64,000 bases of DNA from Lytechinus pictus (Eukaryota), in assembly GCF_037042905.1 (NCBI RefSeq), contig NC_087263.1:10540001-10604000 (forward strand), read 5' to 3'. The translations under genes and the position numbers were made by a program. The notes under the pieces were generated by a model. It saw only the letters and a list, made by a program, of their open reading frames with translations, did no database searches and had not been told where the DNA came from. Each line of letters begins with the position of its first letter. Position 1 is the stretch's first letter. Of this stretch, positions 6,030 to 58,848 are shown piece by piece.

Positions 6030-6262
6030 ATGCGGAGTTTTGTATGCGTGTTAGTGTGTGTAGCGGCATTGGCCGCCCACAGCAGTGCTCAGTTACCCGG
6101 CGGAGGTGGGGGATTCCCTGGTCAAGGAGGACATGGTCAAGGTGGACCCGGCCACCACCACCCAGGTGGTGGTGGACCTCTCATACCACCCGTAAGCCCA
6201 GACCCAAACAGGAAAGAACCATGCGCCAAGTACTGGATGCAAGAAGGAGATAGCTGCTACCT
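6030..6262 (+). CDS. SM30: SM30-family spicule matrix protein, gene 1, exon 1 (signal peptide, Gly/His/Pro-rich segment, start of CTL domain)
   Basis: ATG at 6030 (aagaagATG); [20 protein letters not shown]|Q signal peptide; [22 protein letters not shown] resembles the recalled SM30 sequence [22 protein letters not shown]; donor CT|GTAAGT at 6262/6263 (phase 2). Confidence 0.95.
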
Positions 6263-6280
6263 GTAAGTCTTAAGAACTAA

Positions 6281-6669
6281 AGCCCGGCGCACACTATGCG
6301 ATCCGTTGCGATTTCAAAGAAATTGTAATAACATTTGAGATGAACATTCCAGCCCATAAACTGTGAGCGATCAGAGTTCAGCTGGAATCGAAATTCGGTC
6401 TAGTTCGAGCCTCCCTGTAGGAATAAAAGCAAATTCAAATCCTAAATCGCAATTGCGTCATCATAGGCAGCGACCTGAAGCCGATTTGGACTTTACTCCA
6501 ACCACAAGGCTTTGCCGCAAAACAAAATTATGATTTTATTATTCCTAACATAATGCCGAACTTCAAATAAAAGAAGTGTACTTCTTGGTGCTCTTGGAAC
6601 CTTCACATTTTATGCAAAATCCGATTTATAAAAATATCGCATCGGATCGCATGTATTGCGCGCTGACCT
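6281..6669. mobile_element. MITE at the 5' end of the gene 1 intron (PIF/Harbinger-like)
   Basis: gcgcacactatgcgatccgttgcgat / atcgcatcggatcgcatgtattgcgc imperfect TIRs with TAA-like flanks. Confidence 0.5.
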
Positions 6670-54780: not shown

Positions 54781-57700
54781 GTAAAGCGCCATTCGTGAAA
54801 CAGTTGTTCATTGGCAGAAGGACATTTGACAATGCGTTTTCTATATGTTCTTCAATTCGGCGCACGCCGTGGAGCGAGAACTCCTTAATCATTAGCAATC
54901 TACTATGATCTTTTTAAAGAAAATTTTAAAACAGAAAAATGGGTCTTTTTCATCATGGGGTTAACCCGGTAATTGGAACGTCGGCGTGCATACTTGCGGC
55001 TTCCCGTCCCTGACAGTCCATTATGGGATCGGGTAAAAAGTGGGGACTGACTCATTACCCCTGTCTCTCCCAACGGAAGGTGAGTTTTCTTTATCTGTAC
55101 CTCAAGTGCGACCCCCTGCTACCCTACATGACCCTCCTGCTCCTCAAGGAATAGTTAAGAAGGTGAGGTTTACCGCTCCCCAGAAAGGAGGTCACACCCC
55201 CACGCTCCTTCAGCATCGCAACTTTGACTTTATTGGATAATGTTAACCATACCAGCTTCATGGTGACGGAATAACTATTTTTATCACTTTCCATTAAAAA
55301 TATTCATATTTTGGGGTAACATCCAAGTAACATATTGCCAAGCGTCGAATTGCAAGACTACGTGAAGGCAGTATTTCCCTTTGTAATTTGGTAGACTGTA
55401 TGAGCGGTCCACTATCATTTTACAAAAAATGTAGGATATTATATAATTATATATATATATATATATATACATATAATATATACATCTTTATTATAAAGGC
55501 AACATTATTTATAAGGTTTTGCTTTCGGATTGTTTCCTTTTTTATACCAATATTTTTAATTGATATTTTTTCTTGAGATTTGCAAAGTAATATAATTTCG
55601 AATAAATTTAAACCAAGTTGGTTAAAAATTGATCATTTTTTCAAACGAACGATACGGTATCAACTTAAGACGAAAATAAAGAAAATAACATAAATTTCTT
55701 TATAAAAGGAACATGTGACTGTACTATGATTTTAGGCTGATGATGAGATGTGAACCTCGAAACATGTTCCGTTTAAAACAATGTTACGTTCCTTTCCTTA
55801 TTTTCGTCTTTAAGTTATTATTTATGTCCTGTTGGTATGTCATTTTCAGTGTCCTCTATTCAATCGCTTTGGAGTGTGTTTTATGGTTTTAACAACGATA
55901 GTACGTGTTAGATACGCCAGGGCCCCGTCTTACAAAGAATTGCGATTGATCCGATCAACCAAAACTATGGAAAGCCAAGAAAGCAGCTTCTAAAATGCAT
56001 ATTTGTTCAAAAAAAAATCTAAATACAATGTACATGTATATTCATACATTCATCGTTTTCTTAAAAAATTAAGTGGACTTCTTTGTGCTTATAAAGGACA
56101 TTGTGCAAATTTCCTGTACAAATGAATTTTTACGTTCATGGATTTCCATATACTTGAGGTTGATCGAATCAATCGTAATTCTTTGTAAGATAAGGCCCAG
56201 ATCGACGAACGCTATAACGCAATTTTCAATGACATACCGTCGGTCGGTTTGGAGTCGGGTTATTTAAACCATGGACCTACTTGCTAGTAGGTCCATGTTT
56301 AAACACGTGTACACGGTGGTATCAATAATGAATGCACAAAGCATTTTCATTCACTTGATGCAAGTTAAAAGAGCAATGTATGGAAATACGCCTCGGTCAA
56401 GGGCCGTGCCGGGAATCGAACTCCGGACTTTGTGTAGTCGTGCGCCTTTGGCCACTCGACCAAGGCATCACACAATACTACGGACCATTCACACCAGAGT
56501 TATCCATTCAAGACCGTTCAAAGATATTCCGTTATTTCCAATGACAGACCAAGGGTAGGATCGCAATCGGTTTGTGACTGTGACATCAGTGTTCGCCATT
56601 AAAGCTCATTCTTCATGCATGGATAGCAGGGGGTTTTAGAATGTCTTGAAATAATCTATTTATTTCCATATGTATTCATAAATTTATTTATAAATTCATG
56701 TATTTATTTATTTATTTACTTATTCATCAATCGATTCATTAATTCCTTTAACTACTTATCTATCTATCCATCCATTCATCCATCTATCTATCATTTTGAA
56801 TCATTTATTTCCTAACGATTTCTGCTTCTTGAAGCTGAATAAAATTTCATTACATACTTTCTGTATATATCTTATATAAAATGCTGTTCTTAGTTAGGTT
56901 TGACATAATTTGTTTTTATTTGTGCAGCCTTACAAATAATTAAGATATCATCAGCATTATATTTAACCCTCCAAGCAGTAATAAAAAAAGAAAAAGGTGA
57001 ATAAATATCACACTGTAGAGAGATAGTGTTCTTTTTTTTTCTCGGAAATACGAGGCCGTCTTAAATACTCGAGATCGTTGATCGTGCCCTCCAAAAGAAA
57101 AGGAAAATTTTTGAGATCGAAGCAACTCAGGTAGCTCAATGAAAGTACATCAGAGCCAAAGCTGAACACTACGATGCGCTAAAACTATCTTTCAAAAAAT
57201 TATATTTTTTTAAACTGATAGATAAGATAATAAATTTTGTCTGTTAAGGAATGCTCTTAGCAGCTGCCTGTGAAGGCTTTAATATTGCAATTTTGCGGCA
57301 TGTTTTGTTTTCATAGGTAATTAACGTAAATTTAAAAGGCACTGTATAAAAAACGAAAATTATTAAGAATAGTATCGTTTCTCTATAACAACGGCTAACT
57401 TTAGTTTTCAGTCCTTACATTACATTCAGAACTTTAACTTTCTTTAACAAGATGTACAGTTCGTCTATATAATTGAACCGTGACTAGAGTTTAGACCGAT
57501 GATAATTTTGAACTAAAAATCAGCCTGTACGCGGATACAGTCACCTCATTCGAGACAGAAATCGACATTTTGTTTTAAATCAATGCTCCCTCCTTTTTTT
57601 GTACAAAAGGATCTTTGAAGGTTCGAAATCATTTATAGACAATCGCAATGTTGATTTGGATTGATCATCACCATGATCACGTGTTGACGTCTTAAGTTAT

Positions 57701-57949
57701 TGATTAATCTATATATTTCTAAAAAGCATAGAGTGAAGGTTGATTAACTATAAAGAGCCCAAAACATAAACTGTGCCATCGTTCATGTTCACACGACCTT
57801 TCAAACAGGGAAAGTTTTTCAATGTTGGGATGTCAAAATCAGTCACCTTAGGTTATTTTTTTTAGATATAGAATACGGACAAGACAGACATCGCAGGGTT
57901 TGGACTATACATCCGGCATTATGAAATTAGAAAATGCTTTGGAACTTAC

Positions 57950-58848
57950 AGATAACAGCTGTTTCCTTCCTCAATCCAATATTTAGCGCATCTCTCCCTC
58001 CTGCTGGGATCGGGAATAACTGGTTCAATATTAGGTCTGCCAGCGCCAGGCCATTGACCACCGGAACCTCCTGCACCTTGGCCAGGCCATCCTCCTCCAG
58101 GTTGACCGCCAGCTCCCCATCCAGGCTGTCCACCAGGTTGACCAAAGCCAGGTTGACCAAAGCCAGGCTGACCGAAGCCAGGCTGACCACCAGGCTGACC
58201 GAAACCAGGTTGACCACCAGGCTGACCGAAACCAGGTTGGCCAAAGCCAGGCTGACCGAAACCAGGTTGACCACCAGGCTGACCGAAACCAGGTTGACCA
58301 AAACCAGGTTGACCAGCTCCGGGTTGTCCCCATCCAGGTTGACCAGTTCCAGGTTGTCCGGCTCCAGGTTGTCCCCAACCAGGTTGACCAGTTCCGGGTT
58401 GTCCCCAACCAGGTTGACCAGTTCCTGGTTGTCCCCATCCTGGCTGACGTCCCCCAGGAGTTCCAGGGAATCCTGGCTGTCCACCTGGTTGTTGTCCTCC
58501 AGGAGTTCCAGTTCCAGGGAAGCCTGGTCGTGCACCAGGTTGTTGACCACCAGGGGTTCCAGGCCTAGGGAAGCCCGGCTGTTGTCCACCCGGCTGTCCA
58601 GGCCTACCGCCAACTCCTGGCTGTTGTGCACCAGGGGTTCCAGGCCTGGGGAAGCCTGGTTGTTGTCCACCCGGCTGTCCAGGCCTCCCACCAACTCCAG
58701 GCTGTTGTCCTGGTTGTTGACCAGGTTGCTGATTTCCAGGTTGACCGGGTCTTCCGAATGGCGGTTGTTGCCTTCCCGGGATCTGGGGATTCTGAGCTTG
58801 CACAGACAACGCTGCAACACACACCAACACACAAATATAACCCCTCAT
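57950..58848 (-). CDS. SM30: SM30-family gene 4, exon 1 (signal peptide + ~260-aa Gly/Gln/Pro repeat domain)
   Basis: ATG at 58848 (gtaaagATG); [18 protein letters not shown]|Q; [17 protein letters not shown] repeats; [22 protein letters not shown]; donor CT|GTAAGT at 57950/57949 on the minus strand. Confidence 0.93.

What the first reader, a model, noticed from the sequence alone, without database searches (positions are those of the whole stretch)
6030..58848. Four SM30 paralogs share one scaffold but each has a different disordered module
Seen: same intron position and phase, aagATG(c/a)g start, signal peptide followed by Gln, CTL domain and tail. The slot between signal peptide and CTL holds a short Gly/His stretch (gene 1), (QPGG)~25 (gene 2), six 15-mers (gene 3) or a multi-block ~260-aa repeat (gene 4). 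A second slot after the CTL holds Pro/Thr, short Pro, Thr-rich or GQPRP repeats respectively. Known: canonical SM30 is a ~290-aa CTL protein without a long repeat. Inference: two slots were expanded independently, giving a graded set of matrix proteins; genes 2 and 3 may be uncharacterised family members.
Basis: partly seen in the sequence, partly recalled or inferred. Interest (0 to 1): 0.7.

Follow-up and report, generated by a model that had tools for sequence, protein, structure and literature searches.

The report
Sea urchin SM30 skeleton-protein gene cluster
The window holds the four-gene SM30 skeleton-matrix cluster of the sea urchin Lytechinus pictus; each gene matches an already described SM30 gene of the purple sea urchin, repeat-rich parts included, so the pattern is real but ordinary.

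Summary
The window, from Lytechinus pictus chromosome C19, holds four intact two-exon genes of 308, 364, 415 and 573 aa.

Phylogeny, gene order and junction motifs show these are orthologs of S. purpuratus SM30-A/B/C (gene 1), SM30-D (gene 2), SM30-F (gene 3) and SM30-E (gene 4).

The long N-terminal repeats are not new:
- SpSM30-D has the same QPGx tetrapeptide array.
- SpSM30-E is a 533-aa protein whose lectin domain starts at residue 291.
- In SpSM30-F the lectin domain starts at residue 122.

L. variegatus has the same four genes in the same order, all annotated. Gene 2 is transcribed and spliced.

Two things are modestly new:
- Repeat copy number differs between the two Lytechinus species.
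- Constraint on the lectin domain weakens from A to E to F to D.

Another note of this scan (s1-317690) covers gene 4 on this same DNA.

The parts
6030..6262 (+). g1 (SM30-A/B/C type) exon 1: signal peptide, 39-aa Gly/His-rich slot 1, first two Cys of the lectin-like domain
   Evidence: model. 98.7% identical to XP_054774309 of L. pictus.
8368..9061 (+). g1 exon 2: rest of the lectin-like domain, Pro/Thr slot 2, conserved tail
   Evidence: Pfam Lectin_C 30.1 bits. 100% match to P0001 over this exon.
18227..18720 (+). g2 (SM30-D ortholog) exon 1: signal peptide, (QPGG)n array, SCPPMW...GSCYR junction
   Evidence: Tandem repeat 18323-18606, 12 nt x 23.7. The same architecture is seen in exon 1 of L. 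variegatus and S. purpuratus SM30-D.
22131..22731 (+). g2 exon 2: divergent lectin-like domain, short Pro slot 2, tail
   Evidence: Lectin_C 24.7 bits. Transcript contigs begin alignment exactly at 22130/22131, with unique intron sequence uncovered.
45227..45747 (+). g3 (SM30-F ortholog) exon 1: signal peptide, six 15-aa units, NGPGRC...NCYL junction. The RefSeq model uses an upstream ATG at 45188.
   Evidence: Tandem repeat 45374-45660, 45 nt x 6.4, 94% match. 100% identical to XP_054775223.2.
47941..48667 (+). g3 exon 2: lectin-like domain, Thr-rich slot 2, tail
   Evidence: Lectin_C 28.5 bits. Groups with F-like proteins at 99/99 support.
57950..58848 (-). g4 (SM30-E ortholog) exon 1: signal peptide, 261-aa multi-block Gly/Pro/Gln repeat, RERCAKYW...SCYL junction
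   Evidence: Tandem repeats within 58121-58710. The L. variegatus ortholog is 536 aa.
53435..54257 (-). g4 exon 2: lectin-like domain, [10 protein letters not shown] x 3 slot 2 (53604-53746), tail
   Evidence: Lectin_C 27.9 bits. 30-nt unit x 3.3 at 97% match. L. variegatus has one unit.

Best explanation
This is the SM30 spicule-matrix gene cluster of Lytechinus pictus, in the order A-type, D, F, then E on the opposite strand. Each gene is the ortholog of a described S. purpuratus SM30 gene.

Inferred from the S. purpuratus literature, not tested here:
- Each gene encodes a secreted protein made by skeleton-forming cells and trapped in calcite.
- The protein combines a folded C-type-lectin-like domain with intrinsically disordered Gly/Pro/Gln or Pro/Thr segments.
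- Work on recombinant SM30B/C and SM50 suggests that such disordered segments drive hydrogel-like self-assembly, water exchange and handling of amorphous calcium carbonate.
- The paralogs are used in different tissues: A/B/C in the embryo and in part in adult tissues, E everywhere, D in adult skeleton, F mainly in spine.

Shown here:
- The differing repeat modules are old, paralog-specific features that predate the Lytechinus/Strongylocentrotus split.
- Their unit number still drifts, probably by replication slippage or unequal exchange, while the type of repeat in each paralog is kept.
For: Species and annotation:
- The window is L. pictus: 100% matches to XP_054774309 and XP_054775223.

Phylogeny:
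- The lectin-domain tree places g1 in the A/B/C clade (96/87), g4 with an E-like protein (100/98), g3 with F-like proteins (99/99) and g2 with a D-like protein (97/96).
- AU tests reject the four as one clade (p 0.00025), g1+g4 as a clade (p 0.001), and g2 inside the F clade (p 0.008).
- The D-, E- and F-like proxies match the SpSM30-D, -E and -F domains printed in PMC2909932 supplementary file 6.

Gene order:
- L. variegatus has annotated genes of 305, 359, 401 and 536 aa in the same order and orientation.
- S. purpuratus has A (312 aa), then genes of 288, 288 and 290 aa, then a 342-aa gene.
- Exon 1 of that 342-aa gene is a QPGG/QPGR/QPTG array ending in SCYR, as in g2.
- An E-like and an F-like gene lie tail to tail on one ENA contig. 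A 140-aa ORF with a weak Collagen hit lies upstream of the F-like exon.

Published sizes:
- SpSM30-E is 533 aa with its domain starting at residue 291. The SpSM30-F domain starts at residue 122.

Expression of g2:
- A 2153-nt contig in run X15 aligns from its position 582 exactly at 22130 with no mismatches.
- Depth over 18645-18800 equals 76/156 of the contig depth, which fits coverage that stops at the end of exon 1.
- Unique intron bins have zero depth in X1, X15 and X5.

Constraint (dN/dS, L. pictus vs L. variegatus):
- Lectin domains of A, E and F give 0.03, 0.11 and 0.16.
Against: - I could not obtain full-length SpSM30-E and -F. Identity of their repeat units with g4 and g3 is inferred from the lengths of the segments, not seen.
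- The tree uses unnamed database proteins as stand-ins for SpSM30-D, -E and -F.
- g2 sits on a long branch (1.21), so its placement leans on synteny and junction motifs as well.
- The runs that hold g2 transcripts are only guessed to be RNA. One true RNA-seq run (X19) had no reads on g2 exons.
- Secretion, occlusion in mineral and tissue use in L. pictus are inferred from S. purpuratus and were not tested.
Confidence: 0.9

Rival explanations
1. One reading: genes 2 and 3 are uncharacterised SM30-family members, and the slot expansions are an undescribed graded series that arose in this cluster.
For: - g2 found no match in a word-indexed search of 5.8 billion proteins.
- g2 does not appear as its own representative in the exhaustive profile search.
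- g2 and g3 are only 44-50% identical to their nearest strongylocentrotid-type relatives.
Against: - SM30-D and SM30-F with N-terminal repeats were described in 2006-2010.
- Tree, synteny and junction motifs assign g2 to D and g3 to F.
- g3 is XP_054775223.
- The L. variegatus g2 ortholog is an annotated 359-aa gene.
- sm30f is named in L. variegatus in PMC13200730.
Confidence: 0.04
2. Gene 2 is a decaying copy: an SM30-D ortholog whose lectin domain has lost function and is on its way to becoming a pseudogene.
For: - Longest branch in the tree, at 1.21.
- dN/dS is about 0.5 over 22261-22564 against organism B, compared with 0.03-0.16 for the paralogs.
- WIGLH has changed to WIGAY.
- No reads in RNA run X19.
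Against: - The 364-codon frame is intact with canonical splice sites.
- Spliced transcripts appear in three studies and two species.
- The L. variegatus ortholog is intact at 359 aa.
- dN/dS is still below 1.
- The QPGG peptide is kept despite heavy synonymous turnover: dN/dS is 0.11 across exon 1.
- SpSM30-D protein was detected in adult mineral.
- Six of seven within-species differences in exon 2 are synonymous.
Confidence: 0.06

Closest known systems
S. purpuratus SM30 family (SpSM30-A to -F; Livingston et al. 2006; Killian et al. 2010; Mann et al. 2008, 2010)
   Same: [quoted passage not shown]
- Paralog-specific Pro/Gly/Gln repeats before the domain in D, E and F, and a Pro/Thr/Ala segment after it.
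- Cluster order A/B/C then D, with E and F tail to tail.
   Different: - L. pictus has one A/B/C-type gene where S. purpuratus has at least four.
- Repeat arrays differ in length and purity. D slot 1 is about 125 aa of nearly pure QPGG, against about 100 aa of mixed QPGG/QPGR/QPTG.
- E is 573 aa against 533 aa.
- The slot 2 of g4 ([10 protein letters not shown] x 3) is unlike the PGNY/RMP segment of the E-like protein P0006.
- The lectin domains of D and F are only 44-50% identical between the lineages.
L. variegatus SM30 cluster (GCA_018143015.1, CM031033.1, about 13.31-13.37 Mb)
   Same: The same four genes in the same order and orientation. Lectin domains are 93-99% identical.
   Different: - F has five rather than six 15-aa units.
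- E slot 2 has one rather than three [10 protein letters not shown] units, and E slot 1 has several small indels.
- D exon 1 is 161 rather than 165 aa.
SM50 family (SM50/LSM34, SM32, SM37, SM29, PM27)
   Same: - C-type-lectin-like domain plus long Pro/Gly/Gln/Asn repeats.
- Matrix proteins occluded in the same mineral.
- g4 is basic (mature pI 9.7), like the alkaline SM50 family.
   Different: - A separate lectin-domain clade in the published alignment.
- SM50-family repeats lie after the lectin domain.
- No SM30-type C-terminal tail.
- Not tested in my tree.

Membership tests
SM30 spicule matrix protein family | [quoted passage not shown] | tested here: met
   All four second exons score above the Pfam Lectin_C gathering cut-off: 24.7-30.1 bits against 22.6.
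SM30 spicule matrix protein family | Lectin domain groups with SpSM30 proteins rather than with other lectins | tested here: met
   Each gene pairs with an A/B/C-, D-, E- or F-type protein at 96-100 bootstrap support. SM50-family sequences were not included in the tree.
SM30 spicule matrix protein family | Two exons with the intron inside the lectin domain, just after the second Cys (C-Y-L/R) | tested here: met
   Phase-2 intron in all four genes. The same split is seen in S. purpuratus and L. variegatus loci.
SM30 spicule matrix protein family | Conserved C-terminal tail (FGGS.L.E..R..RP.N....P..A..P) | tested here: met
   Invariant columns in the four-gene alignment and in the 12-sequence alignment.
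SM30 spicule matrix protein family | Residence in the syntenic SM30 cluster | tested here: met
   The same order is seen in L. variegatus. A/B/C followed by D is seen in S. purpuratus. E and F lie tail to tail on an ENA contig. The link from D to F/E in S. purpuratus was not seen.
SM30 spicule matrix protein family | Secreted by skeletogenic cells and occluded in calcite | not testable with these tools
   Only a hydrophobic leader and spliced g2 transcripts were seen. Protein evidence exists for the S. purpuratus orthologs.
SM50 family | Lectin domain of SM50 type with repeats after the domain and no SM30 tail | tested here: not met
   All four carry the SM30 tail and group with SM30 proteins. 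Only the repeat composition of g4 resembles SM50.

The most novel reading that the evidence does not exclude
Within a conserved SM30 cluster the paralogs lie on a steep gradient of constraint. The A-type lectin domain is almost frozen (dN/dS 0.03). The SM30-D lectin domain evolves about fifteen times faster (about 0.5), yet its QPGG array is kept at the peptide level despite heavy DNA turnover. This would mean that in the adult-skeleton paralogs the disordered repeat, not the lectin fold, carries the selected function, and that changes in repeat number between sister species tune mineral properties.
Probability: 0.25. Interest if true: 0.4.

Novelty: already known. Interest (0 to 1): 0.22.

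Why it matters
- It settles which L. pictus genes correspond to SM30-A, -D, -F and -E. RefSeq calls those I could check only '30 kDa spicule matrix protein alpha-like'. This helps a species now used for sea urchin genetics.
- It shows that only the A/B/C type was multiplied in Strongylocentrotus.
- It gives exact coordinates and repeat counts for comparison between species.
- It does not reveal a new kind of matrix protein. The scaffold-plus-variable-repeat design of the SM30 family has been in the literature since 2006-2010.

Tried and rejected
- A word-indexed protein search with g2 exon 2 found nothing, not even a self hit. This shows a gap in that database, not novelty, because the L. variegatus ortholog is an annotated gene.
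- A profile search seeded with 12 family members was swamped by low-complexity words: 8000 candidates, 4 hits.
- ENA contigs carrying E-, F- and other SM30-like genes gave gene layouts but no DNA.
- The look-up of the L. pictus RefSeq protein P0156 returned nothing (the tool notes that the window's own genome may be left out), so I could not read the L. pictus annotation of g2 and g4.
- Raw RNA-seq run X19 had no reads on g2 exons. About 6% of the run was read and the tissue is unknown.
- The list of differences for organism B is capped at 40 rows, so the dN/dS of about 0.5 for g2 rests on one 304-nt segment.
- ARAGORN and Rfam found no RNA genes in the window.
- Livingston 2006 and Killian 2010 are not held in the paper library.
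- I did not type the SpSM30-D, -E and -F sequences from the supplement into scripts. Database proxies were used instead.
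Full report
**What is there**

The window is G000:C19:10540001-10604000 of an 812-Mb genome. It is Lytechinus pictus. Gene 1's second exon is 100% identical to XP_054774309 (accession), and gene 3 is 100% identical to XP_054775223.2. Both are named '30 kDa spicule matrix protein alpha-like [Lytechinus pictus]'.

I built four gene models from the sequence:
- g1, + strand: 6030-6262 and 8368-9061, 308 aa.
- g2, + strand: 18227-18720 and 22131-22731, 364 aa.
- g3, + strand: 45227-45747 and 47941-48667, 415 aa.
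- g4, - strand: 58848-57950 and 54257-53435, 573 aa.

All four are open. Each has one GT..AG intron in phase 2 directly after Cys-Tyr, an aagATG start, and a hydrophobic leader followed by Gln. The second exons all pass Pfam Lectin_C. They share 52 invariant positions, including a C-terminal tail. No other SM30 exon lies in the window.

The whole genome holds only two further relatives. One lies 23 kb upstream of the window. The other is at C19:0.897 Mb.

**The two variable segments**

Before the lectin domain:
- g1 has 39 Gly/His-rich residues.
- g2 has about 125 residues of QPGG; at DNA level a 12-nt unit x 23.7 copies.
- g3 has six 15-residue units; a 45-nt unit x 6.4 copies at 94% match.
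- g4 has 261 residues in several blocks.

After the lectin domain:
- g1 is Pro/Thr-rich.
- g2 is short and Pro-rich.
- g3 is 43% Thr.
- g4 carries [10 protein letters not shown] x 3; a 30-nt unit at 97% match.

**What the genes are**

Mann et al. 2010 (PMC2909932) state that the S. purpuratus SM30 family has members A-F. They also say that many spicule-matrix proteins carry short Pro-X-Y repeats whose number and position, before or after the lectin domain, vary between proteins.

- Their supplementary file 7 prints SpSM30-D. It has a signal peptide, Gln, a QPGG/QPGR/QPTG array, and then ISCPELW...GSCYR. This is the layout of g2, down to the Arg at the splice junction.
- Their supplementary file 6 gives the start of the lectin domain as residue 45 in B and C, 61 in A, 118 in D, 122 in F and 291 in E.
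- Their supplementary file 3 lists SM30-E as 533 aa and 54.9 kDa.
- The first lectin Cys lies at 65, 148, 161 and 287 in g1-g4. The graded segment lengths are therefore shared by the two species.
- Junction motifs agree as well. F has NGPGKC...CYLYSS and EISGKW, against NGPGRC...CYLYSS and EITGKW in g3. E has [24 protein letters not shown], against [24 protein letters not shown] in g4.

**Phylogeny**

An exhaustive profile search returned SM30-like representatives. By eye, three of them match the printed domains closely: P0011 matches SpSM30-D, P0009 and P0158 match SpSM30-F, and P0006 matches SpSM30-E.

A maximum-likelihood tree of 29 sequences gives these placements:
- g1 falls inside the A/B/C clade with Sp, Hp and Pl SM30 (96/87).
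- g4 pairs with the E-like protein (100/98).
- g3 and its L. variegatus ortholog group with the F-like proteins (99/99).
- g2 pairs with the D-like protein (97/96).

AU tests reject three alternatives: the four window genes as one clade (p 0.00025), g1+g4 as a clade (p 0.001), and g2 inside the F clade (p 0.008). g2 is a long branch, so its placement is also supported by synteny and by its repeat and junction.

**Synteny**

- In L. variegatus (CM031033.1) the annotated genes are 305 aa, 359 aa, 401 aa and, on the opposite strand, 536 aa. Order and orientation are the same as in the window.
- In S. purpuratus (AAGJ06000017.1) a 312-aa gene (A) is followed by genes of 288, 288 and 290 aa, then a 342-aa gene.
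- Exon 1 of that 342-aa gene is the SM30-D repeat exon.
- On one ENA contig an E-like and an F-like second exon lie tail to tail, as g4 and g3 do. A 140-aa ORF with a weak Collagen hit lies upstream of the F-like exon.
- L. pictus thus has a single A/B/C-type gene. The multiplication of that type is on the Strongylocentrotus side.

**Expression of gene 2**

g2 was absent from the protein searches, so I used the single reads call on 18645-23300.

- In run X15 a 2153-nt contig aligns from its position 582 to window 22130-23300 with no mismatch. The 581 letters before that equal 494 nt of exon 1 coding sequence plus 87 nt.
- Depth in the first bin is 76/156 of the contig depth in X1, X15 and X5. 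That is coverage stopping at the exon 1 end, 18720.
- Unique intron bins have zero depth.
- This is a spliced mRNA in two studies of organism A and in one study of a closely related organism B.
- Two caveats apply. The run types are guesses, and true RNA run X19 had no reads on the exons.

For g3, a RefSeq model exists. In addition, a 2026 study of L. variegatus lists sm30f and sm30a among mRNAs enriched in skeletogenic cells (PMC13200730).

**What changes between species**

L. pictus against L. variegatus:
- F has six against five 15-residue units.
- E has three against one [10 protein letters not shown] unit after the domain. It also has several indels in the N-terminal blocks, while its lectin domain is almost identical.
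- D exon 1 is 165 against 161 aa, with repeat indels.
- Within L. pictus, two RefSeq versions of g3 differ by a 3-residue indel in the Thr-rich segment.

Nei-Gojobori dN/dS for the lectin part is 0.03 for A, 0.11 for E and 0.16 for F. For D it is about 0.5, but this rests on the differences listed for organism B over 22261-22564 only. Across D exon 1, synonymous change is heavy (dS 0.59, inflated by repeat misalignment) while dN/dS is 0.11. The QPGG peptide is therefore kept.

**Mechanism**

Shown here: the gene structures, domains, orthology, the g2 transcript, and the repeat turnover.

Inferred from the literature:
- SM30 proteins are secreted matrix proteins occluded in calcite. E is abundant in all skeletal elements, D is found in adult elements, and F is found in spine.
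- Recombinant SM30B/C and SM50 combine a folded lectin-like domain with a disordered repeat region. They form hydrogels thought to control water exchange and amorphous calcium carbonate (PMC6771980).
- By extension, the differing segments would set the aggregation strength and charge of each paralog. The mature pI is 6.1-6.5 for g1-g3 and 9.7 for g4.

**Verdict**

Noticed in passing
L001:8703-9420 (G000:C19:10516.7-10517.4 kb, minus strand), 23 kb before the window: A further SM30-like second exon (RIIPFKYNRSPYVGG...EVIRRRP...). It is the ortholog of S. purpuratus XP_011673770 '30 kDa spicule matrix protein-like' and forms its own deep clade (100/100) in the tree. Its first exon was not located.
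   Followed up: partly
L002:8865-9647 (G000:C19:896.9-897.6 kb): A distant SM30-like gene, ortholog of S. purpuratus Sp-Clect (Glean3:00164 / LOC581461). Mann et al. add this gene to the SM30 family. It lies 9.6 Mb from the cluster on the same chromosome.
   Followed up: partly
window 18957-19892 and 20985-21764 (g2 intron): Dispersed repeats with very high depth in all runs. In RNA run X19, reads at 18957-19580 are strongly strand-biased, and many run on into a tRNA-like 3' end (GGTTCGAATCCCACCGCGGT). This suggests an expressed SINE-like family. ARAGORN and Rfam found no RNA gene in the window.
   Followed up: partly
window 22953-22991: The X1 transcript contig skips 39 nt of the g2 3' UTR that the X15 contig contains. 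This is probably an indel polymorphism.
   Followed up: no
window 45188-45226: The RefSeq model of g3 starts at an upstream in-frame ATG, adding 13 basic residues before the leader. The L. variegatus model and the aagATG context shared by all four genes favour the ATG at 45227.
   Followed up: partly
window 27380-37576: Another note of this scan calls this a degenerate DIRS retrotransposon. It accounts for much of the 22-kb gap between g2 and g3. I saw only a low-complexity ORF at 29953-30609.
   Followed up: no
L006 and L009 (S. purpuratus AAGJ06000017.1, 5.008-5.075 Mb): Spur_5.0 carries at least four A/B/C-type SM30 genes (312, 288, 288 and 290 aa) before SM30-D, one more than the A, B, C of the 2006 description. 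About 21 kb between the two loci was not seen.
   Followed up: no
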